Origin: Podarcis erhardii
Taxonomy: Eukaryota
Reading direction: 5' to 3' (one strand)
Length of the DNA stretch: 64,000 nucleotides
Assembly: GCA_964252035.1 (NCBI GenBank)
Contig: OZ176205.1
In this document: piece by piece, positions 9,035-59,446 of the stretch
How the letters are laid out: each line of letters starts with the position of its first letter
How positions within the stretch are numbered: position 1 is the first letter of the stretch
The notes under the pieces: generated by a model
Database searches by the model: none
What the model saw: the letters and a program-made list of their open reading frames with translations, nothing else
What the model was told of the DNA's origin: nothing
Translations under genes and position numbers: made by a program

Positions 9035-9656
9035 AAATCCTGCCCACATACACATGGATGGAGAGGGAGTAAGGGCCAAGTCAGGGGAAGGGAAAGACAC
9101 TGACCTTCCTGCTTTCTTCTACTTCAGTTTTCATAATGGGCTATGCAAAGGTCAAGTTAATGGAAAATTTAGTATGAACACCAGGAATTAAATGACTGGT
9201 GTATTTTTGTTTGTTTGTTTCATAAAGGAAAACAAAGAGATAACAAAAGGTGTAAAAATAATACTTTATGCTATAATTAAGCAGCTAAAACCTAGTGTGG
9301 AACTTGTATTTTTTTGGGGGGGGGGTCACTTTTATATTGGAACAATTGTGAAAAATTTAAGGAGAATGGTGCTGAGGACAATATGTGTAACAAAACAAAC
9401 TTGTCCATACTATAAGATTAGTGAAGGGCAGAAACTAGAGTTGAAGTTAGCAAATCCTTCTTTTGTGACCAGGTAAAGTTTTTACCCCTGTAAGACCCTT
9501 TTCTGTACCATGGAGACCTATGAATATCTAAATATATTCTATATTATATGTGAAAGTAATACTGGCTGGAATTTAGTCAAAAGCCCTTTCATGAGCACAA
9601 GTGTAAATGCAAATCTATTAACAGAAGTGTTGGGGAGGTGCTTTTGATTGGTTTTC

Positions 9657-10333
9657 TTTTTTTATATAATAATTTTTATTCAGTTTTTAAAACACATAAT
9701 TAAAAAAAACAGACACATCACAGAATACAAACAAACATAAACAAATCAAACAAATCAAACATAAATAAATTCATAATCTTATTTTCTTGTAACTTCTTTC
9801 AATCGACTTCCCCTTACCTCGCTTTCGCTGCATCCCTATTTTAAAAATTTTTAGCAACCCTTTAGTCAATTTATCCATTTAGTTCCCTTCATTAAATTCC
9901 CATAAATTTGTTAATTACAGCTGTAGTTCTCTGCTTCTTACCCCTTGACATCTTAGCACTCCTCAATTTTACAACAGTTTTTAAGATATATTTTAAATTT
10001 CTTCCAGTCTTCTTCCACTGCCTCTTTCCCCTGGTCACGAATTCTGCCGGTCATCTCTGCCAATCCCATGAAGTCAATCACCTTTGTCTGCCATTCTTCA
10101 AGAGTAGGTAGTTCTTGCATCTTCCAATACTTTGCCAGAAGAATTCTTGCTGCAGTAGTAACATACATAAAGAAAGTCCTATCCTTCTTTGGCACCAATT
10201 GGCCAACCATGCCCAGGAGAAAAGCCTCTGGTTTCTTAGTAAATGTCCATTTAAGGACTTTCTTAATTTCATTATAGATCATTTCCCAGAATGCTTTCAC
10301 CCTCGGGCAGGTCCACCATAGGTGATAAAAGGT
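9657..10333 (-). mobile_element. 5'-truncated L1 (ORF2 C-terminus, 3' UTR and short A tail), part of an L1-7SK chimeric insertion
   Basis: Encodes TFYHLWWTCPRVKAFWEMIYNE...EEDWKKFKIYLKNCCKIEEC*, clearly homologous to the ORF2 end at 27762-28140. The whole insert is flanked by the 17-bp direct repeat GCTTTTGATTGGTTTTC (9640-9656 and 10392-10408). Confidence 0.92.
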
Positions 10334-10394
10334 ATGTGAGGGCGATCTGGCTGCGACATCTGTCACCCCATTGATCGCCAGGGTTGATTCAGCT
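10334..10394 (+). pseudogene. RN7SK: 7SK snRNA 5' fragment (about nt 3-63), retrocopy
   Basis: ATGTGAGGGCGATCTGGCTGCGACATCTGTCACCCCATTGATCGCCAGGGTTGATTCAGCT matches the vertebrate 7SK 5' end as I recall it (GGATGTGAGGGCGATCTGGCTGCGACATCTGTCACCCCATTGATCGCCAGGGTTGATTCGGCT), with one CpG-type G>A change. The upstream sequence is L1 rather than a Pol III promoter, so this is not a gene. Confidence 0.9.
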
Positions 10395-11866
10395 TTTGAT
10401 TGGTTTTCAATCCCCACCTCAGCTCCTGGGCATCCGGAAATCAGCACCAGAGTTGGGATACTTCCAAAACTGAGTGGAAGGTGGTATTTGGTGGAAATGG
10501 GAATCAGCAGGGGGGAAAGGAGAAAAAAGAATCAGTTCCTCTTCGATTCGGGTATATTTGCATGGTATCAAAAGTCCTTCTGGGGCATGAGTGTACCACT
10601 TGGATTCCACTGAGAGTCAGAAGAAGCCTGGATAATCCAAAGTGTTCTTTTCTAGCCATGTATCTAAATATTTACCTAGGTTGCTGGCCTTGTGAAATAC
10701 ATCATCGGGTAAAAAAAAATCACACTGAAGTGAAATCTCTTGTTTTTCACCAAGCAACACAACACAATATCCCAACAGGAGAATGGCAACACTTTCCAAC
10801 TTTTTTCAAGGAAGCCTAAAGGGGATTTGTCTGCCAGAGTTTAGGCTTCTATTTATTAGTTTTCTGTACGTCAACCAAGGGAAAGAAAATAAACTATTAA
10901 CATGTGTGCTGAGAACAAGGTCCGTCCTTTCGATGTAATAAATAATTATGACTTTTTCTAAGAGGTCAGAGAAATTTAGTCAAAAAGGGCACCACCAGAC
11001 TTTCTCTTGCTTGTAATTATGTGAACGGGCAATTTTTCATTTTAATACGGCACTGTCGGGCCATTGTTTCTCAGAAACACATATGCACATGTCATAAAAG
11101 AGCAATCCTTCACAATGCAAAGCTATTCCATTAAATATTAACACATTTACTTACAGAGATATATCCAGGTCCCATTCAAATGAATTCAGATCTCCTCCTG
11201 GAATTAGAACTGATGTCCTGTTACTGTGCCAAATGGTAATTATCTGTAAGATGCAGCATAGATAAACATTCATGCTTTTCTGGCATGAGACCTACTCCCC
11301 TCACCTGCACACACCTTAAGGGCTAGATGTACCGGTATAACTTTTCACCCCCTTGTGGCTAAACAAGGTTGGTAGATCTGTTGCCAGAAAACACCATGTG
11401 TGATTTATTCCTACTGTACATCAAGGTAACAATGCTACATGCGGGTTATTTAGATGCTGAAGAATTTACTCAGTGGGATCTTCACAACCACATTCTGTGG
11501 ATTGCAACAAAGATCGATTGCAGAAGAGGGCCTGATACCCAGAATACACTTTCCAACTGCTCACATAGGAAGCAGATGACTGTTTAAAAACAACCCAAAG
11601 GATCCCTACCACCAGGGATTATAGGCTAGAAGAATTTGAAGCAAGGTTTCTTGCCTTTCTTTCCCTCCCAAGAAGCATTAAACCCAGCAAACTCACAGCA
11701 ATAGTCCCCATGATGCCACTGCTGGGAGCGCGGTGGTGTGACACCAGCCCACCTTACAGACTGATCCCAGATCTGTCTCGATGTAAGGCAATTTCTCTCT
11801 GATACACAAGCATTGATGTTGTTGACTAAAATGGATACAGCAGTATTTATGTATCTGTTAAGGACA

Positions 11867-25651: not shown

Positions 25652-27761
25652 TATTCTGAGAAATATATGATCACTGAAAAACCTCTTGGCCTAACTTACC
25701 TAATGGGTTCATTGCTCCTTGTATCCTTACATCAGCTCCTTGAAGGAAAGGTAGATACAAACAGGGAAAATATAAAGAAAAAGGAAATATATCCCTGTTG
25801 ATAAGTTTAGTAAAGTCATGCACATTGCCTGAAAGTATAGTCTGTGCCAATCTTCTGCTACAATGTGCATCCCCAGATGTTGGCCACTGCACAGGAGTTG
25901 GGTAGAGAAATCGAATCCATCACCCAAGCCTAATCCAAACAGCTTTCCTGGCAAACTTATTTTCACATTATTTTGGGAATTGGTGCCTGTCTGCATTTAG
26001 TGGACATTACAGGCAGTGGATCAGCTATAAGACTGAGCTGGTATCTATTCTGTACCAGTGGAAGACATGTTTTAATATGGCTCATTATTAATCATTCAAT
26101 GTCAAGCTCAGAAAAAGATTACTATGAAGCATTATCCAATTATTCAAGATATAGGCAAACGAGAATAAAGATGTAAACATAACATAAAAAATGTATTGAT
26201 TCATAGATTAACTCACATCAATTTCTCCAGCTAGTGCTACAGATTTCCTATAATATATTACATAGGCAAGTTGGAACATTTCAAGGCCACCCTTTGTTTG
26301 GGGGAAGCACTTAATGGCTTTTAGTTCCTATGTTCCTGTTTTAAGAAATATTCCCTGTAATTCAATAAGATGAAGCAATAACTGGATCCAACAGGATCTC
26401 AAAAAGTCAAATGGAATGCCTATGAATTGGATTTTTCGAACAGAGTATTTTTTTTCTACCTGACACTCCCTACATATATGTTAAGCATTGTTTTGATGTT
26501 TCAGTCATATATTTGGACAAATATTATTTATTTGATTCACTATCTCCAGGAGTATACCACTGCATCATACTTTTGAGGCATTTCCCCCTTATACCAATAT
26601 TTAAAGAAATCCTATTATTGTGTCTTTTCCAACAACTTTTCCAGTGGGATATTCTTTTCAATACCTTGGACCATTTCATATTTGTTTGCTCATGTGTGTG
26701 TGAATCTGGAAGTCATTAGTCTGTCAATATTTAGTTAGCTCTAATATATCTATTTGTTATTTATCTTATTTGAAAATACAGGTAGAATGTATTCTGATTT
26801 CTGAATACACGGGCTATCCTGAATTATCAAAACTGCATATCTGGAAGAAGAATACAGTATTTCTTTCATACTTGCTGAAGCTTCTATCCATATCTAATAT
26901 CTAATATGGATTTCAATACTGAGATGTTTGAGTTTAAAAATCTCATATAACAATCCCATCTTTTTAACAAATTGGAGATTAAAATATTATCAACTATTTG
27001 CTTTGCTCTATTTTGTATTATCTCCCCATAATGACTTTGGGATTCATTGTTTGTTTATTGTAACTATGAGACACCTCATAAAATAAATTCTCTAGGTGTT
27101 GTAAAATATAAAAAGAACAAAATAAAGCAATATCCTACATGCCACAAATAGCAGTATAAGGCCGTTCCATCACAATTCCACACACAATTCCACCACAATT
27201 CCACAGTGGTACTGCCTGACAGGGTGTATTTTTAGCCTGTTGGCCATGAGAAACAACACACCAAGCAGCAGTGCACCTATTGCTGCATTCAAAAAGTGGC
27301 ACAAGTTTAGGGAGGGCAGGCTTTAGGGCCCTATATATGGGGCAGCCTCCTCCCCATCTGCCTCTACTCTGGAGGCCACACCCTGCCTCCCACCATCACT
27401 GTCTCCCAGCATGACATGCTGGTCACTACTAGAGGGCTGAATAGTAATTTTTCTCTATCTGCATTTTTTTTAAAATAAATATTTATTAAAGTTTTTGAAT
27501 ATAATACATAAATAATAAACAACATTACTTATATCATAACATAGTTTCATCACTTCTTTGGACTCCCTCACGTCTCCCACTCCCACTTACATCGTTATAA
27601 AATTTTTCAAGCAAATTATCATCTTGTTTAAAACCTTATATCCGCTCATTTAAATAAAATCTAGCAGTTCTCCAAAAAATTTATATTTTCCTTAATCTCA
27701 CTTATCGTCAAATTCAAATCTAATTCAGTGGTGGACAATTATTTATGATCTAGCATCCTTC

Positions 27762-30700
27762 TTAACATTCAACCAAATTACAATATTTTTGTAGATAAAT
27801 CTTAAATTTCTTCCAGTCTTCTTCAACCCTCTCTTCTCCCAGGTCTCGGATTCTGCCAGTCATCTCGGCCAATTGCATATAGTCCATCAGCTGCATCTGC
27901 CACTCTTCCAGTGTGGGTAGATCTTGAGTTTTCCAGTTCTTGGCGATGAGTATCCTTGCTGCCGTTGTTGCATACATAAAAAATGTTCGGTCCTTCTTTA
28001 ACACCTTCTGGCCGACCATACCCAGAAGGAAGGCTTCTGGTTTCTTAGTGAAGGTATATTTAAATACCTTTTTCAACTCATTATAAATCATTTCCCAGAA
28101 GGCCTTCACTTTAGGGCAGGTCCACCAAAGGTGAAAGAATGTTCCTTCGTTTTCTTTACATTTCCAACATTTATTATCAGACAAATGGTATATTTTGGCA
28201 AGTTTAACTGGGGTCATGTACCATCTGTATATCATTTTCATTACATTTTCCTTCAGAGCATTACATGCAGTGAAGTTCAGCCCAGTGGTCCACAACCTTT
28301 CCCAGTCCTCAAACATAATGTTATGCCCAATGTCCTGTGCCCACTTTATCATAGCCGATTTAACCATTTCGTCTTGTGTATTCCATTTTAACAGCAAGTT
28401 ATACATTCTTGATAATACCTTAGTCTTTGGTTCTAACAATTCTGTTTCCAACTTCGATTTCTCCACCTGGAACCCTAACTTTTTGTCATTTTTAAAAACT
28501 TCTTTAATCTGAGCGTAATATAACCAGTCTCGCACTTTATCCTTCATTTTCTCCAAACTCTGCAATTTCCAATTGTCTCCATCTTTTTCTAATATTTCCC
28601 AATATTTTGGCCATTTGGCCTCCATATTGGGTCTTTTTCGGGCCTTAGCTTCCAGAGGAGAAAGCCACCTTGGAGTTTTGTTTTCCAATAAGTCTTTATA
28701 TTTTGTCCAGACATTAAACACTGCTTTTCTGACAATATGGTTCTTAAAGGCCTTGTTGATCTTAACTTTGTCGTACCATAAGTATGCATGCCAACCAAAA
28801 GCGTTATTAAAACCTTCCAAATCCAGTACATCAGTGTCTTCAAGAAGTAGCCAATCTTTTAGCCAGCAGAAAGCTGCGGCCTCATAGTACAACTTTAAGT
28901 CTGGCAGGGCAAAGCCCCCTCTTTCTTTCGCATCAGTTAATATCTTAAACTTAATTCTGGGCTTTTTGCCCTGCCAGACAAACTTAGAAATATCTCTCTG
29001 CCACTTCCGGAAGCACTCCGTCTTATCCACAATCTGTAGTGTTTGAAACAAAAACAACATTTTTGGCAATACATTCATCTTAATAGCAGCAATTCGGCCT
29101 AACAAAGAAAGTTTCAGTTTTGTCCAACTGTCTAAGTCTCTCTTAATTTCTGACCAACATTTTTCATAGTTATCCTTAAATAGACTCAGATTTTTTGCTG
29201 TTATATTTACCCCTAGGTACTTTACTTTTTTAACCACATTCAATTCTGTCTCTTTCTGAAACCGTTCTGACTCTGTATCTGTCAAGTTTTTTCCCAACAC
29301 CTTGGTTTTCTGTTTGTTTAATTTAAATCCCGCCACCCGACCAAAGTCCTGAATCAATTGTAGTACTCTTTTCGTACTAGATTCTGGCTCCTGCAGAGTC
29401 AAAACTAGGTCATCTGCAAAAGCTTTAAGTTTATATTGTTTCGCTCCGACCTGAATTCCTTCCACCAACCGGTCCCCTCTAATAATATTCAGGAGCACCT
29501 CCAGAACCGAAATAAATAGCAAAGGGGAAATCGGGCAGCCTTGTCGTGTTCCTTTTTCGATTTTAAACTCTTCTGTAACCACATTGTTAACTATCAATTT
29601 AGCCTTTTGTTCTGAGTATATTGCATCAATCCCATTCTCAAAACCCCGTCCCACTCCCATTTCTTTTAGATTTCCCTTCATAAATTTCCAGGAAATATTG
29701 TCAAAGGCCTTCTCCGCATCTATAAAAATTAACACTGCTTTTGTATTTATGTCTGTTTGCAAAAGTTCCAAAATGTCAATAATGTTCCTTGTATTAGCAA
29801 ACAAATGTCTACCTGGGAGAAAGCCTGCCTGGTCCTTGTGAATTACTTCATTTAAAACTTTTTTAAATCTACTTGCCAAAATGTCTGCAAATATTTTGTA
29901 ATCCACATTTAAAAGAGAGATGTGACGATAGTTCTTAAGTTGTGTCTTTTCAGCTTCTGATTTTGGTATCAATGTGATAAAGGCTTCCTTCCACGATTCC
30001 GGCGCCCTCTTCCCCTCCATAATTTCATTGCTAACCTCCATCAGTGGTTGTATCAAATAATCTTTTAATGTCTTATAGTACTTGGAGGTCAGCCCATCTG
30101 GCCCTGGAGATTTGCCCAGTTGCATGTTCTGAATGGCTTGTTCAATCTCTTGTCGTGTTATTTTACTGTTCAGGAGTGATCTATTTTCTTGTGACAGTTT
30201 TTTAAGTCCATTTTTTCCCAAAAATTGTTTAATCTCAACCTCATCCTGCGGCCCTTGAGTGTATAATTTTTTGAAATATTTCTGAAAACATTTTCTAATC
30301 TCCGCGGGGTTCTGAATGTTTCTTCCTTCAATTTCCAAATTTGTAACTGCGTTTAATTTTTGTCTCTTCTTCAACTGCCACGCTAGCAGTTTCCCACATT
30401 TGTTTGCCGATTCAAAGGTTTTTTGTTTCATTAGTTTAATCTTCCACTCTATTTCCTGATTTATCAGTTTAGAATATTGTGCTTGATGAAGTTTGATTTC
30501 TCTCAGAATCGGCTGTGACTTCGGATTTAATCTTAACTTCTTCTCTAATTCTTTAATTTTCTCCAAAATCTTATCTTTCCTCTCGTTTTGTGTCCTTTTC
30601 TTTACAGCATTCTGTTGTATCAAGAACCCCCTCATCACGGCTTTGCTTGCATCCCAAATAGTTCTTTTTTCCACCGTAGTGTGCATGTTTATCTCAAAGT

Positions 30701-31502
30701 AGTCCTTCAAAGCTTTTTGGGCCTTCTTAATGATCTCCTGATCTGTAAACAAATTGTCATTCATCTTCCATCTAAAGGAACCGGTTGGTAATAGTGTCAT
30801 ATCCATTTTCAGTGCACTATGGTCGGAGCAGGTCTTTGGGCAAATTTCCACCTTTCTGACCTTGGGTGCCAGACCTCTAGTTATCCATATTTGGTCGATT
30901 CTTGTCCAGGTCAGCTGGGCTTCAGAGAAAAATGTTCCTTCTCTTCCCAAGGGGTTCTTCATTCTCCAGATATCAATCCAATCCATATTGTCTGTCATTT
31001 CAAAAAAGGTCTTTGGTAGTCTTCCGTCTTTTGTGACGTTTTGGCTTTGTGACTTATCCATGTTAGTTGAAACGACCCCATTCATATCTCCCATCATGAT
31101 GATGTTGTTGTAGTCCAGATAGTCCAGCATGATCTCATGCAACTTCTTGTAAAATTCCGATTTCCCTTCATTTGGGGCGTAAATTCCTAATATCAGGATT
31201 TTCTCTCCTTGGTGTTGTATTTCGATTGCCAAAATTCTTCCATGTTCATCTTTAAATAGAAATTTAGGTGAAAGGCTCTCTTTTGCATATATGACCACAC
31301 CTCTCTTCTTTACTATGTCCGAAGATATGAATTCCTGGCCAAGCCTTTTATTTATTAATACTTTTCTGTGGAGCCTAGTCACATGTGTTTCTTGTAAACA
31401 AATAATGTCCAATTGTTCCTTTTTTAATATGTGAAAAATTTTCCTCCTTTTTTCCGGGATGTTGCAGCCATTTATATTCCAGCTCAAAAGTTGCAGAGAC
31501 AT
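27762..31502 (-). CDS. L1 ORF2p: APE endonuclease, reverse transcriptase and C-terminal Cys/His motif (1246 aa, uninterrupted)
   Basis: SWNING, LQETH, MGDMN, TRIDQIW and SDHSAL (endonuclease); PGPDG, LLNVDYKI, DAEKAFD, GTRQGCPISPLLF, FADDL and YLG (RT); CWKC...HLWWTC at the C-terminus. Confidence 0.96.
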   Translation of the reverse strand: MSLQLLSWNINGCNIPEKRRKIFHILKKEQLDIICLQETHVTRLHRKVLINKRLGQEFISSDIVKKRGVVIYAKESLSPKFLFKDEHGRILAIEIQHQGEKILILGIYAPNEGKSEFYKKLHEIMLDYLDYNNIIMMGDMNGVVSTNMDKSQSQNVTKDGRLPKTFFEMTDNMDWIDIWRMKNPLGREGTFFSEAQLTWTRIDQIWITRGLAPKVRKVEICPKTCSDHSALKMDMTLLPTGSFRWKMNDNLFTDQEIIKKAQKALKDYFEINMHTTVEKRTIWDASKAVMRGFLIQQNAVKKRTQNERKDKILEKIKELEKKLRLNPKSQPILREIKLHQAQYSKLINQEIEWKIKLMKQKTFESANKCGKLLAWQLKKRQKLNAVTNLEIEGRNIQNPAEIRKCFQKYFKKLYTQGPQDEVEIKQFLGKNGLKKLSQENRSLLNSKITRQEIEQAIQNMQLGKSPGPDGLTSKYYKTLKDYLIQPLMEVSNEIMEGKRAPESWKEAFITLIPKSEAEKTQLKNYRHISLLNVDYKIFADILASRFKKVLNEVIHKDQAGFLPGRHLFANTRNIIDILELLQTDINTKAVLIFIDAEKAFDNISWKFMKGNLKEMGVGRGFENGIDAIYSEQKAKLIVNNVVTEEFKIEKGTRQGCPISPLLFISVLEVLLNIIRGDRLVEGIQVGAKQYKLKAFADDLVLTLQEPESSTKRVLQLIQDFGRVAGFKLNKQKTKVLGKNLTDTESERFQKETELNVVKKVKYLGVNITAKNLSLFKDNYEKCWSEIKRDLDSWTKLKLSLLGRIAAIKMNVLPKMLFLFQTLQIVDKTECFRKWQRDISKFVWQGKKPRIKFKILTDAKERGGFALPDLKLYYEAAAFCWLKDWLLLEDTDVLDLEGFNNAFGWHAYLWYDKVKINKAFKNHIVRKAVFNVWTKYKDLLENKTPRWLSPLEAKARKRPNMEAKWPKYWEILEKDGDNWKLQSLEKMKDKVRDWLYYAQIKEVFKNDKKLGFQVEKSKLETELLEPKTKVLSRMYNLLLKWNTQDEMVKSAMIKWAQDIGHNIMFEDWERLWTTGLNFTACNALKENVMKMIYRWYMTPVKLAKIYHLSDNKCWKCKENEGTFFHLWWTCPKVKAFWEMIYNELKKVFKYTFTKKPEAFLLGMVGQKVLKKDRTFFMYATTAARILIAKNWKTQDLPTLEEWQMQLMDYMQLAEMTGRIRDLGEERVEEDWKKFKIYLQKYCNLVEC

Positions 31503-31517
31503 CCTGAATAAATCTGG

Positions 31518-32552
31518 TTATTTTCCTTGGGGTGGTACTTTGTTCTCCGGGTCTTCAGGGTCCGAGGGTGCAGGTACCCCTGGTGGTTCAGGCCCCGAGG
31601 GTAGTTCAAGTCCTTTGTGAAGGTCCTCTCCGTATGCAGTCAGAAACTTATCTCTGTCTTCCAGTGCTCTAATTTTAATCTTCTTCCCTCTAAAAGTGAA
31701 AGATAATTCTTGGGGAAAATCCCACCTGAAGATGATTGAGTTGCTCCTCAACAATCTTACTAGCTCCAAATAATCAGATCTAAGGTCCAACAGTTGTTTA
31801 GGGATATCCTTGTAAATTTCAATTCTTTTGTCCAAAATGTCCAGTGACTTTCCGTAATGCAGGCCCAAAATCTTGTCCCTTTCCTCCTTTGATCTCAATG
31901 TTATCAAACAGTCTCTGGGCTTCTCTTTCTTTATAAGTCTTCCAAGCCTGAAAGCTGATACGATTTTAAAGTCTTTTTCCTCTAGATTCCAAAACTTGGA
32001 AAATTCTTTAGTCAGAAACTCAGCTAGGTTGCCTTCTTCCACTTCTGGTACCGACCTTATCCTTAAGTTGGTCTCCCTGTTCCGCAGTTCTATCATGGAA
32101 AGATAGGTCTGATGTTCACCTACTTGTTTACTGAGTGGTCTTACCTCTTATTCTAACTCTCCCAATCTTTGGCTGGTATCCTCAGCCAATTTCTGATTTT
32201 CACCTGCAGCCTCCTTCAGTTCTCCAATTGCTTGTGCATTCTGTGCAACTTGTCCAGTTAGTCTATTTAAACATTCTGTATTTTGATCAATTTTAGCTGT
32301 TTGCTGATCAACTTTTCTATCCAAAGACTCCAATTTTTCAAGAATTTTCTCTAAAATAGAGCCAGTTGCTCCTGAGGCCATATCTTCCAATTGTAATTCC
32401 TCAGTTTCTCCCTCCCCTGCCCGTGGCAGAGAAGTAGCTTCTTCCTCAGAAGGCAAAGTAGGCACAGATGATCTGCGTGCCTGTGAGGCTGCGGTTAAGG
32501 TTGTTAGAGTTGTTTGTCTGGTTTTTGGTCCCTTTCTTTTTGCGCCACTCAT
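31518..32552 (-). pseudogene. L1 ORF1p (344 codons) interrupted by one in-frame TAA at 32148-32150
   Basis: ORFs 32148-32552 and 31518-32096 are in the same frame, bridged by 17 open codons (EVRPLSKQVGEHQTYLS). Coiled-coil heptads are followed by the RRM-start motif RNRETNLRIRSVPE and a CTD; a 15-nt spacer precedes ORF2. Confidence 0.88.
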
Positions 32553-33279
32553 TCCAAAGTTATCTAAAAGTCAAGGTCAAGCTGAGTTGTTCCCATGAGA
32601 AAACAACGGCCCAGATGGTAACAGTCAAACAGGAGGCCAGGAAAATGAAAGTAAAACAATGTCACTGCTTTAAATCCCAAATCCTCTAGGGGGAGCTTAA
32701 AATGTCTTTAGGGAAGAGATCAATTCCAATAAAATTAATAAAGTCTAAATCAATGTCCAGGAACCTTCACTAAGATAGGTTTTAGCAGAGTTAGTATTTA
32801 AAAAGCCACAATGTTTCGGACAGTGCTTACTGGAATTCCAAAAGGTACTTCAAAGTAGCAAGTCCAAACTCCCTCAGATTGTTTCAAAGTTTAAGTTCAA
32901 AGTATCCAAATCTGCAGGCTGACTGCTCAGCTGCTCAGGCAGTTCCAGCTCCTGGGTTTCTTACTTAAATTGTAATCCAAATAGAAGAAAGGTATCACAG
33001 TTCCAATAGAAGTCATAACATCAATTACTTAGAGTCCTTAATCTGCTTAAAAGTAATTTCAGTGGGTGCCCAGCTCAGTTAGGTTGAAAGTTCGCTCTTT
33101 GCCTCCACTCCTCCGGCTCTTTACTTTGAGGTTCAGTGTCAGCGGAAGACGGACTTCCTGTTTTTCTTCACTCCACTTTCAGCCAAATTCGTTATTTTTA
33201 GATCTTAAATTTTTGTAAAGTCCTTATTACTCACGGGTTGTTTCTTTCCGAATCAGAGGTTTCAGGAAGAAAGGTCAGC

Positions 33280-33555
33280 GCTCACCGGCAGCAGCAACGC
33301 GGCTTCGCTCCGTTGATTGCGAAACGACCCACAGCGCCGCTACCCCCTCCGCGATCCGGAGCCCCTTACGGGGTCCCTTCAACGTTTCGGGGGCCGCTCC
33401 TGGCGCCCGCCGGGTCCCGAGACCACAAGCTTCTGCCGCCTGTGGTTTTTCAAAGTGGGTCTCCGCTTCGCCGCAGCGGACGACCCGTTCTCAGCGGAGC
33501 TTCCCTCTCCCGGTTAGAAGAGGGCAGCCATTGCCGTTCGCGCCGCCTCCGGAAG
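33280..33555 (-). promoter_or_regulatory. CpG-rich 5' end of the L1 5' UTR (probable internal promoter)
   Basis: Dense unmutated CpGs (CGCCGCAGCGGACGACCCG, CGCGCCGCCTCCGG) in an otherwise CpG-depleted window. The element begins (GA)CTTCCGG. Confidence 0.65.
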
Positions 33556-35062
33556 TCTATCTGCATTTTAAATCATGACCAAGGCTGTTTGGGTGCCAAA
33601 ACTAAGCGTAAACCCCAATAAAAATCATAAAATTGTAGAGTTGGAAGGGACCCAAAGGGTCAGAAATGGACTGAGAAAATCAGTCTCATTCAAGAGAACC
33701 TGGATCTGGTCACCACAGCTAAATCCTATTAAGCTCTTCCAGGTCCAATGAAAGCTTTATGGAGACTATGACTACTCCATCTCTGAAAAAGAAATTTGCC
33801 TTCTGGATGCAACCATTTGTCTTCTCCTTGCCAGATATAATCAGGCAACAGAAGCAAGGGTTGAACAAGCATGTGGTTGGCTCAACCTCACCAAACATCT
33901 CATCCCCATCCTTGGGCCCTGCCAACTCAAAATCACCTAGCAGCATCAGAGCAAATGGTGCTTTAGACACTACTACGGATTGTACATTGTACATCAAAAT
34001 TGTTGCATATGTGCCACAGCATGCCATGCATATTCAACTTGGTGATTTTGCTAGTTGTTCTGTGAAACAGGCCCTTTTTTATCTGATGTTCCACCACATT
34101 CAGGACAAAGTTGGTGATGGTTGTTATCACAGCAATCACTTCTTATGAAATCTGACAAGGTTCCACAGAAGATGAAGAGGAGCGTACACTTGAATAGAGC
34201 AAAGGGAGGTTGTCATGAAACAGTTCAAAGCGCTTTGGTGAATTTCCTGAAGTCGAGGGAAGTCATTTGCATTTGCAGCATGTCACCCCTCAAGCCCCAC
34301 CATAGCACTGTTTTGGCTGTTAAAATAACTATTTCCAGAGCCAATTTGTGAATCGAGGCAATTCACAAAGCGGCAGAGCTTCGTACCATAAAAATAGATG
34401 CCAGAGATAATTGGGCAAGGTGGTGTCATGTCACTTGTGTGCAGCTCATTAATTAACTGCTTGAAACTGCTATAAAATAATAGCCATGTCATCAAGAAGA
34501 AAGTACAGAAGTGGAAACTAAAACTGCTGTAAGGAAGAAAACAGAAGCAGCTGTTATTAAAATACCCTCAAGTTACCATTCATTTTTAATGGCTACCCTC
34601 TGGCCTTCCCACTGCCAAAATTGAACCTAGACATGTACCTAGCAGGCATTCAGCTTACCCTGTTCCTAGCATGGCTAGACTTTTTAGTGGTGATATCAAT
34701 TTAGTTTCCTCATTTTTTAATATGAAATGGATCACATCCCCAACCAGGCCAAGATTTACATTCAGCAGAACATAGCAAGAATGGAAGGGAAGTACTTTAG
34801 CATTTATTCATTTGGTTCACACAGGGAGCATATGAGTACTGAAGTATCCTTGGATGCAACCTATGTAGCCCCTGGCTCTAAGCCTCAAGTGAAACTTATT
34901 TCCATGGGAAGATACATAGGCAATGTAGTGAATGCTCCTAAGATGTATAAAACCATTCTTTGCTGTAAATTCAGAATCTACGGATCTGCTAAGGGTGAGA
35001 ACATTCCCAAGGGGTGGGATTCAGTGACACGCTATGTTGAATACTGTGTCGGCACAAGCATA

Positions 35063-59317: not shown

Positions 59318-59446
59318 NNNNNNNNNNNNNNNNNNNNNNNNNNNNNNNNNNNNNNNNNNNNNNNNNNNNNNNNNNNNNNNNNNNNNNNNNNNNNNNNNNN
59401 NNNNNNNNNNNNNNNNNNNNNNNNNNNNNNNNNNNNNNNNNNNNNN
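59318..59446. other. Assembly gap (129 N)
   Basis: Run of N. Confidence 1.

What the first reader, a model, noticed from the sequence alone, without database searches (positions are those of the whole stretch)
9640..10408. L1-7SK snRNA head-to-head chimera inside one TSD: apparent twin priming on two different RNAs
Seen in the sequence: one insertion bounded by a perfect 17-bp TSD (GCTTTTGATTGGTTTTC) holds an L1 3' end on the minus strand (9657-10333) joined directly to 7SK nt ~3-63 on the plus strand (10334-10394). The last three 7SK bases (GCT) are also the first three bases of the right TSD. The fragment keeps the GAUC motifs at about nt 13-16 and 42-45 and stops just before the next GAUC of the HEXIM-binding 5' hairpin. 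Established: the well-known small-RNA/L1 chimeras such as U6-L1 are co-oriented, classic twin priming inverts part of the same L1 RNA, and tailless retrocopies arise by internal microhomology priming. Inference: the first nick primed on the L1 A-tail, while the second-strand 3' end (...AAAAGC-3') primed on a separate RNA, 7SK, at GCU and copied toward its 5' end; the two cDNAs were then joined. That would be trans twin priming in a non-mammalian L1 and would imply 7SK associates with lizard L1 particles. I do not recall this configuration being described, but I cannot check the literature.
Basis: partly seen in the sequence, partly recalled or inferred. Interest (0 to 1): 0.85.

Follow-up and report, generated by a model that had tools for sequence, protein, structure and literature searches.

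The report
Lizard L1–7SK head-to-head retro-insertion
A young L1 retrotransposon fragment in a lacertid lizard genome was inserted together with a backwards-facing 58-61 nt piece of 7SK RNA inside one target-site duplication; it is a clean example of an already described kind of event (twin priming on two different RNAs), not a new mechanism.

Summary
A perfect 17-bp direct repeat (9640-9656 and 10392-10408) encloses two pieces. One is a 5'-truncated L1 3' end on the minus strand (9657-10333), with 126 open ORF2 codons, a 3' UTR, AATAAA and an A7 tail. The other, abutting it head-to-head, is 7SK nt 3-63 on the plus strand (10334-10394). Its last three bases, GCT, are also the first three bases of the right repeat.

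Neither piece has a repeat of its own. An L1-endonuclease-like nick site (TTTTC/AA) exists only in the L1 orientation.

The novelty premise is wrong. Doucet et al. 2015 described inverted, 3'-truncated U1/U2/U5/U6-L1 chimeras and proposed exactly this model. Law & Burns 2026 list four human 7SK/L1 chimeras, three of them antisense and head-to-head. Mendez-Dorantes et al. 2024 recovered opposite-orientation two-RNA insertions de novo.

What is new is only the host, a Podarcis-like lizard, and the cleanness of the example. Other unchecked notes of this scan suggest 7SK/L1 chimeras recur in this genome. The empty-site test could not be run with these tools.

The parts
9640..9656 (.). Left copy of the 17-bp target-site duplication (GCTTTTGATTGGTTTTC). 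Its 3' end (TTTTC) is the inferred first-strand primer.
   Evidence: Exact repeat found only twice in the window. It is the only direct repeat of 6 bp or more bracketing the insertion.
9657..9663 (-). L1 poly(A) tail, 7 A (T7 on the plus strand)
   Evidence: Read directly. It lies 11 nt downstream of AATAAA (9675-9680, minus strand). The full-length L1 at 27468-33555 has a similarly short tail.
9664..9952 (-). L1 3' UTR, including the polyadenylation signal AATAAA at 9675-9680
   Evidence: Sequence between the ORF2 stop codon and the A-tail
9953..10333 (-). L1 ORF2 C-terminal 126 codons plus the stop codon (9953-9955). The 5' truncation point lies inside the CCHC motif (…EG|TFYHLWWTCP…).
   Evidence: Translation is open to the natural stop. 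It is 90.7% identical in protein to Podarcis muralis ORF2 P0012 and 76.5% identical in DNA to the second L1 in the window, with homology ending at 10333.
10334..10391 (+). 7SK RNA nt 3-60, antisense to the L1 piece; the 7SK 5' end abuts the L1 truncation point
   Evidence: Rfam RF00100 positions 6-63, E=4.5e-6. It is the only Rfam hit in the window. Nt 3-5 were assigned from the published 7SK 5' end.
10392..10394 (+). GCT: 3-nt microhomology, both 7SK nt 61-63 and the first 3 bases of the right TSD. This is the inferred annealing site of the second-strand 3' end ...AAAAGC.
   Evidence: Rfam consensus positions 61-63 are GCU; junction printed
10392..10408 (.). Right copy of the 17-bp target-site duplication, followed by AATCCCC. 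The inferred plus-strand nick site is TTTTC/AATC.

Best explanation
This is a single L1 target-primed reverse transcription event that used two RNA templates. (1) The L1 endonuclease nicked the plus strand at 5'-GGTTTTC/AATC. (2) That 3' end primed on the poly(A) tail of an L1 mRNA, and about 677 nt were copied, stopping inside the ORF2 CCHC motif. (3) The minus strand was cut 17 nt away, leaving a 3' end ...CAAAAGC-3'. (4) Instead of annealing to the same L1 RNA, as in classical twin priming, this end paired with G61-C62-U63 of a 7SK RNA. These bases lie on the 3' shoulder of the apical loop of stem-loop 1. A reverse transcriptase then copied nt 60 down to nt 3, essentially to the 5' end. (5) The two cDNA ends were joined without evident microhomology, and gap filling produced the 17-bp TSD. 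The anatomy is shown by the sequence. Every mechanistic step is inferred from it. [quoted passage not shown] 2015, here with 7SK in a lacertid lizard.
For: One perfect 17-bp TSD encloses both pieces, and neither piece has a flanking repeat of 6 bp or more of its own. The pieces abut directly and are in opposite orientation, with the 7SK 5' end at the inner junction and its 3' break at the TSD. This is exactly the geometry expected if the second-strand 3' OH primed internally and RT ran toward the RNA 5' end. An EN-like site is present in the L1 orientation (TTTTC/AA) but not in the 7SK orientation (AAAAGC/AC). The full-length L1 at 27468-33555 in the same window has a 14-bp TSD at TTTT/AAAT, so this lizard's L1 endonuclease appears to use the classical site. 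There is a 3-nt microhomology at the 7SK/TSD junction, with chance about 1/64. The flank itself is not 7SK-like. The L1 piece has AATAAA and an A-tail and is young, with an open frame and a perfect TSD. The same architecture and criteria have been published for U1/U2/U5/U6-L1 (PMC4476161), for human 7SK/L1, 5S/L1 and tRNA/L1 (PMC13174262), and for de novo insertions in cultured cells (PMC11702581).
Against: No empty orthologous site could be examined, so arrival of both pieces at the same time is inferred only from the shared TSD. A scan for the empty site in metagenome contigs found nothing, and the exact-protein look-up found nothing. Three nucleotides of microhomology are weak support for annealing-primed synthesis and equally fit microhomology-mediated end joining of a pre-made cDNA. 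G61 and C62 are base-paired in the Rfam consensus structure, so the priming site is not plainly single-stranded. The nick site has a C between TTTT and AA, so it is near the consensus rather than a perfect match. This is one locus only.
Confidence: 0.7

Rival explanations
1. This is a single event, but the 7SK piece was not primed by the target DNA end. Either a free 7SK cDNA made elsewhere, or a cDNA of a pre-cleaved 7SK 5' fragment (about nt 1-63), was captured as filler between the L1 cDNA and the reciprocal DNA end by end joining (NHEJ or MMEJ).
For: The inner junction shows no microhomology, and the outer junction shows only 3 nt, which MMEJ would also give. Law & Burns favour pre-processed fragments such as tRNA halves and 5S loop breaks as substrates for antisense chimeras. 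The break lies next to the apical loop of stem-loop 1. Mendez-Dorantes et al. report that RT-extended ends can take up additional cDNA products.
Against: The TSD is intact at full length (17 bp), which in de novo data goes with protection of the reciprocal end by secondary RT rather than with end processing. The orientation and the run to the RNA 5' end are what target priming predicts. Random capture predicts either orientation.
Confidence: 0.15
2. There were two independent events. First, a tailless 7SK 5' retrocopy (nt 1-63) inserted with the 17-bp TSD. Later, an L1 inserted exactly at the boundary between the left TSD and the 7SK piece, with no TSD of its own and loss of 7SK nt 1-2.
For: Tailless 3'-truncated 7SK retrocopies exist in primates (Kojima 2010, PMC2912911). 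An unchecked scan note reports an 84-nt 7SK 5' retrocopy elsewhere in this genome. The left TSD ends in TTTTC, which would itself offer an EN-like site for a later L1. The two missing 7SK bases could be a small target deletion.
Against: This needs an L1 to land within about 2 bp of a specific boundary and also to be of the rare TSD-less type. No second repeat exists. The first event would have required a nick at AAAAGC/AC, which is not an EN-like site. Both pieces look equally young.
Confidence: 0.07
3. This is a retrocopy or duplicate of a chimera that already existed elsewhere, for example a transcript running through an older inverted 7SK/L1 locus. The chimera would then not have formed at this site.
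For: Other 7SK/L1 chimeras are noted in the same genome (unchecked).
Against: The 5' end of such a transcript would have to coincide with 7SK nt 63 and with the GCT microhomology. The other notes describe different architectures (a polyadenylated 7SK; a 928-letter element), not copies of this one. This explanation only moves the origin of the chimera one step back.
Confidence: 0.04
4. This is an assembly or sequencing artefact that joins unrelated reads.
For: None specific. The window does contain one gap of 129 N at 59318-59446, far from the locus.
Against: An artefact would not produce a perfect TSD, an EN-like site, an A-tail, and a 58-nt small-RNA fragment ending in microhomology with the TSD.
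Confidence: 0.02

Closest known systems
Inverted snRNA/L1 chimeras formed by twin priming (Doucet et al. 2015, Mol Biol Evol, PMC4476161; 'Group IV, twin' type: U1, U2, U5 and one U6)
   Same: The small RNA is 3'-truncated, lies in the opposite orientation to a 5'-truncated L1, and shares one TSD with it. The L1 EN consensus is seen only in the L1 orientation. The small RNA and the insertion site are complementary at the outer junction. The truncation lies in or next to a loop. The proposed mechanism is the same.
   Different: The RNA is 7SK rather than a spliceosomal snRNA. The host is a lacertid lizard rather than a mammal. In lizards that paper reported only co-oriented U6 chimeras (with L1, L2, RTE and AnolisSINE2) and 3'-truncated U6 copies in Anolis.
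Human 7SK/LINE-1 chimeric insertions (Law & Burns 2026, Cell Genomics, PMC13174262, Table S3)
   Same: The partner RNA is the same. Three of the four human loci are antisense to the L1, with the 7SK 5' part directly abutting the L1 5' end inside a shared TSD. The authors attribute antisense chimeras to twin priming.
   Different: The human pieces are longer (7SK nt 10/12/15 to 235/238) and older (L1PA7, L1MA3), have short TSDs (7-9 bp), and only one of the three sits at an EN motif. Here the piece is nt 3-63, the TSD is a perfect 17 bp, and the site is EN-like, so the junctions can be read without ambiguity.
Classical (cis) twin priming / 5'-inverted L1 (Ostertag & Kazazian 2001, as summarised in PMC2912911 and PMC11702581)
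   Same: Two RT reactions start from the two ends of one staggered break, the outer 5' junction shows microhomology, and a TSD of discrete length is preserved.
   Different: In the classical case both cDNAs come from one L1 RNA, and the inversion breakpoints are close together on that RNA. Here the second template is a different RNA.
U6/L1 chimeras by template switching or RtcB RNA ligation (Buzdin 2002-2003; Garcia-Perez 2007; Moldovan 2019, PMC6789731)
   Same: A small nuclear RNA is fused to a 5'-truncated L1 inside one TSD.
   Different: In those chimeras the U6 is full-length and co-oriented with the L1. Neither mechanism can give an inverted small RNA whose 3' break abuts the TSD.
Tailless retropseudogenes (Schmitz et al. 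2004; 7SK examples in Kojima 2010, PMC2912911)
   Same: The small RNA copy is 3'-truncated and has no A-tail, and internal priming through microhomology with the target has been proposed.
   Different: Those stand alone within their own TSD. Here the 7SK piece has no TSD of its own and shares one with an L1.

Membership tests
Inverted small-RNA/L1 chimera (twin priming on two RNAs; Doucet 2015, Law & Burns 2026) | Small RNA and 5'-truncated L1 directly abutted, in opposite transcriptional orientation | tested here: met
   L1 on the minus strand to 10333 and 7SK on the plus strand from 10334
Inverted small-RNA/L1 chimera (twin priming on two RNAs; Doucet 2015, Law & Burns 2026) | One TSD flanks both pieces, with none around either piece alone | tested here: met
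   Perfect 17-bp repeat; no other flanking repeat of 6 bp or more
Inverted small-RNA/L1 chimera (twin priming on two RNAs; Doucet 2015, Law & Burns 2026) | Small RNA is 3'-truncated, with its 5' end at the L1 junction and its 3' break at the TSD | tested here: met
   7SK nt 3 lies at the inner junction and nt 63 at the TSD
Inverted small-RNA/L1 chimera (twin priming on two RNAs; Doucet 2015, Law & Burns 2026) | L1 EN cleavage consensus seen in the L1 orientation and not in the small-RNA orientation | tested here: met
   TTTTC/AATC versus AAAAGC/ACCT. The reference L1 in the window sits at TTTT/AAAT. The match is near-consensus, with one extra C.
Inverted small-RNA/L1 chimera (twin priming on two RNAs; Doucet 2015, Law & Burns 2026) | Complementarity (microhomology) between the small RNA and the target at the outer junction | tested here: met
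   GCT is shared, 3 nt. There is no extended pairing beyond it.
Inverted small-RNA/L1 chimera (twin priming on two RNAs; Doucet 2015, Law & Burns 2026) | Truncation point in a single-stranded region of the small RNA | tested here: inconclusive
   In the Rfam consensus structure nt 49-59 form the apical loop, G60-C62 are paired and U63 is a bulge. The break is therefore at the loop's 3' shoulder, not inside the loop.
Inverted small-RNA/L1 chimera (twin priming on two RNAs; Doucet 2015, Law & Burns 2026) | Both pieces arrive at the same time (the empty orthologous site lacks both) | not testable with these tools
   No lizard genome collection is available. The empty-site pattern gave 0 hits in metagenome contigs, and the exact-protein look-up found nothing.
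L1-clade LINE | APE endonuclease plus RT plus C-terminal CCHC ORF2, poly(A) tail, TSD at a TTTT/A-type site | tested here: met
   The fragment keeps the end of the CCHC motif, the stop codon, AATAAA and A7. It is 90.7% identical to a Podarcis ORF2. The related full-length ORF2 in the window carries Exo_endo_phos and RVT_1 and aligns over its full length with Anolis and mammalian L1 ORF2 proteins.
7SK RNA (Rfam RF00100) | Score at or above the family gathering threshold (35 bits); full 331-nt architecture | tested here: not met
   The score is 31.4 bits, and only model positions 6-63 are truly matched. This is a fragment copied from 7SK, not a 7SK gene. E=4.5e-6 locally and 1.4e-4 for the whole window.
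U6/L1-type chimera (template switch or RNA ligation) | Small RNA co-oriented with the L1 and located at its 5' end | tested here: not met
   The orientation is opposite.
Classical cis twin priming (5'-inverted L1) | The inverted segment derives from the same L1 RNA | tested here: not met
   The inverted segment is 7SK. L1 homology ends at 10333.

The most novel reading that the evidence does not exclude
7SK is a recurrent, favoured second-strand template during L1 integration in lacertid lizards. At least two further inverted 7SK/L1 chimeras and a short 7SK 5' retrocopy are noted elsewhere in this genome, all unchecked. Together with the human cases, this would mean that 7SK's access to L1 integration complexes is an ancient amniote-wide property. 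Young, clean lizard insertions could then be used to read out the priming rules of the secondary RT reaction: preferred break sites in stem-loop 1, and the microhomology length required.
Probability: 0.3. Interest if true: 0.45.

Novelty: new member of a known kind. Interest (0 to 1): 0.3.

Why it matters
The locus is an unusually legible natural example of secondary reverse transcription on a second RNA during L1 integration. It has a perfect 17-bp TSD, an EN-like site, unambiguous junctions and a 3-nt priming microhomology. It extends a phenomenon documented in mammals (snRNA, 5S, tRNA and 7SK with L1) to a squamate L1 lineage that is only about 30% identical in ORF2 to mammalian L1. This suggests the ability is a general property of L1-clade TPRT rather than a mammalian peculiarity. 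It opens no new question by itself. Its value would come from a genome-wide census in lizards, whose many young L1 families preserve junction detail that is eroded in most mammalian examples.

Tried and rejected
1. I tested whether the target site itself is an old 7SK pseudogene, because cmscan stretched its alignment into the flank (10395-10421). The flank searched alone gives no 7SK hit, so this was rejected.

2. I looked for separate TSDs around the L1 piece or the 7SK piece. There is none of 6 bp or more.

3. I asked whether 10334 onward could be L1 sequence. It is not. The second L1 and the closest Podarcis ORF2 continue with a Gly codon and ...CWKCNETEG, and the window does not.

4. I considered a 7SK-derived SINE or repeat family. 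There is no second copy in the window, and no body or tail follows nt 63.

5. I scanned JGI metagenome contigs for the empty-site sequence and found 0 hits, as expected for a lizard locus.

6. I ran an exact-protein look-up of the 164-aa ORF that runs from the flank through antisense 7SK into L1 (9953-10447, minus strand). It is not on record. This ORF is an accident of the junction, not a gene.

7. Pfam on the 118-aa L1 fragment gave no family. Identity was established by homology instead.

8. I searched the whole window for other small-RNA fragments: Rfam at E up to 0.05, and ARAGORN. Nothing was found besides this 7SK piece.

9. A single-strand fold of the 61-nt fragment is not more stable than shuffles (z = -0.39) and says nothing either way.
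Full report
**Observation**

The 17-mer GCTTTTGATTGGTTTTC occurs at 9640-9656 and 10392-10408 and nowhere else in the window, even allowing two mismatches. About 0.03 matches are expected by chance.

Between the two copies lie two pieces:
- **Tail and 3' UTR.** The plus strand starts with T7 (9657-9663). On the minus strand this is an A7 tail, 11 nt downstream of AATAAA (9675-9680).
- **L1 coding part.** The minus strand of 9956-10333 translates as 126 open codons from TFYHLWWTCP to the natural stop.
- **Match to Podarcis L1.** These residues are 90.7% identical over 118 aa to a Podarcis muralis ORF2-type protein. That protein continues upstream as ...CWKCNETEG, so the L1 piece is truncated inside the C-terminal CCHC motif.
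- **Where L1 homology ends.** A second, 76.5%-identical L1 in the window aligns up to 10333 and then continues with its own Gly codon, while the insertion switches to unrelated sequence.
- **7SK piece.** From 10337 to 10394 the plus strand matches Rfam 7SK (RF00100) positions 6-63. E is 4.5e-6 in a 2-kb search and 1.4e-4 for the whole window, and this is the only Rfam hit in 64 kb.
- **Score below threshold.** The 31.4 bits are below the gathering score of 35, because only about one sixth of the RNA is present.
- **Assignment of nt 3-5.** The three preceding bases (ATG) fit nt 3-5 of the published 5' end GGATGTGAGGG.
- **Differences from the consensus.** Positions 28 and 30 are variable consensus positions. 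Position 60 is G to A in a CpG, either decay after insertion or a lizard variant.
- **Microhomology and GAUC motifs.** GCT (nt 61-63) doubles as the first three bases of the right repeat.

**What it is**

I tested the obvious ways the picture could mislead.
- cmscan extended its alignment into the right flank, which raised the possibility that the target was an old 7SK pseudogene. The flank searched alone gives no 7SK hit.
- Neither piece has a flanking direct repeat of 6 bp or more of its own.
- In the L1 orientation the inferred nick is TTTTC/AATC. In the 7SK orientation it would be AAAAGC/ACCT.
- The full-length L1 at 27468-33555 has a 14-bp TSD at TTTT/AAAT. This suggests that L1 in this lizard uses the classical endonuclease site, so the L1 side of the chimera is the primary TPRT side.
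- The host is a lacertid lizard. The full-length ORF2 in the window has best hits at up to about 93-94% identity in Podarcis muralis, about 40-45% in Anolis, and about 30-34% in mammalian L1 ORF2. It carries Exo_endo_phos and RVT_1 domains.

**Mechanism**

The geometry is what twin priming predicts if the second template is a different RNA.
- After the first-strand cDNA was primed on the L1 A-tail, the minus strand was cut 17 nt away and ends ...CAAAAGC-3'.
- Its last three bases pair with G61-C62-U63 of 7SK.
- Extension toward the RNA 5' end gives antisense 7SK nt 60 to 3 on the minus strand. This reads as sense 7SK followed by the TSD on the plus strand, as observed.
- The inner junction (L1 ...AAAAGGT | ATGTGAGG... 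7SK) shows no microhomology and fits end joining.

All of these steps are inferences from anatomy. I give this reading 0.7.

The main rival, at 0.15, is capture of a ready-made 7SK cDNA, or of the cDNA of a pre-cleaved 5' fragment, by end joining. A two-step history is possible but needs several coincidences and a non-EN first nick (0.07). It would be a tailless 7SK retrocopy followed by a TSD-less L1 insertion exactly at its boundary, with loss of 2 nt. Re-copying of an older chimera (0.04) and an assembly artefact (0.02) are unlikely.

**Comparison with what is known**

It is not.
- **Doucet et al. 2015 (PMC4476161)** found U1/L1, U2/L1, U5/L1 and one U6/L1 chimeras in which the snRNA is 3'-truncated and inverted relative to L1. 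[quoted passage not shown] The U5 breaks fall in a loop. [quoted passage not shown] In Anolis they reported only co-oriented U6 chimeras and 3'-truncated U6 copies.
- **Law & Burns 2026 (PMC13174262)** catalogued human chimeras. 5S, U5 and tRNA pieces are mostly antisense, start at the RNA 5' end at the L1 junction, and are attributed to twin priming. Their Table S3 lists four 7SK/L1 loci. Three are antisense, with 7SK nt 10/12/15 to 235/238 abutting the L1 5' end inside TSDs of 7-9 bp. They also note that 7SK is among the RNAs reported to interact with ORF1p.
- **Mendez-Dorantes et al. 2024 (PMC11702581)** recovered de novo insertions containing two RNAs in opposite orientation. [quoted passage not shown]

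Full-text searches for twin priming together with lizard, and for Anolis together with LINE-1, chimeric, snRNA and pseudogene, found no report of an inverted small-RNA/L1 chimera in a lizard. The squamate host may therefore be new, but the kind of event is not.

**Recurrence**

Three other first-stage notes on this genome mention 7SK: two inverted 7SK/L1 chimeras within one TSD and an 84-nt 7SK 5' retrocopy. They are unchecked AI notes, and I could not read those sequences. If they hold and have independent breakpoints, 7SK would be a recurrent second template in this lizard. That is the most interesting reading still open.

**Limits**

No lizard genome collection is available here, so the decisive empty-site test could not be run. 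A pattern scan of metagenome contigs and an exact-protein look-up both found nothing. The claim of a single event rests on the shared perfect TSD, the one-sided EN site and the microhomology.

**Verdict**

The mechanistic reading is supported as the best explanation. The novelty claim is not supported. This is a new member (7SK, lacertid lizard L1) of a known kind (inverted small-RNA/L1 chimeras by twin priming on two RNAs). Interest is modest.

Noticed in passing
window 27468-33555 (minus strand): Full-length L1 of about 6.1 kb. It has an intact 1246-aa ORF2 (27762-31502; Exo_endo_phos + RVT_1), a 14-bp TSD TCTATCTGCATTTT (27454-27467 and 33556-33569), an insertion site of TTTT/AAAT, and a short A-tail after AATAAA. 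The region where ORF1 is expected reads as two ORFs (31518-32096, 192 aa; 32148-32552, 134 aa) with no Pfam hit. It may be a split or very divergent ORF1.
   Followed up: partly
window 9953-10447 (minus strand): A 164-aa ORF runs from the right flank through antisense 7SK into the L1 ORF2 C-terminus. It is an accident of the junction, and no identical product is on record. Gene callers could mis-annotate it.
   Followed up: yes
window 10395-10421: cmscan stretches the 7SK alignment into the TSD and flank (…UCCCCA…CCUCA). The flank alone has no 7SK signal, so the reported hit end (10421) overstates the 7SK piece by 27 nt.
   Followed up: yes
window 59318-59446: Run of 129 N (an assembly gap or masked stretch). 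It was left untouched.
   Followed up: no
window 10391: The only difference from 7SK at a mostly conserved position is G60 to A within a CpG. The other three CpGs of the fragment are intact. It is either CpG decay after insertion or a lizard 7SK variant.
   Followed up: no
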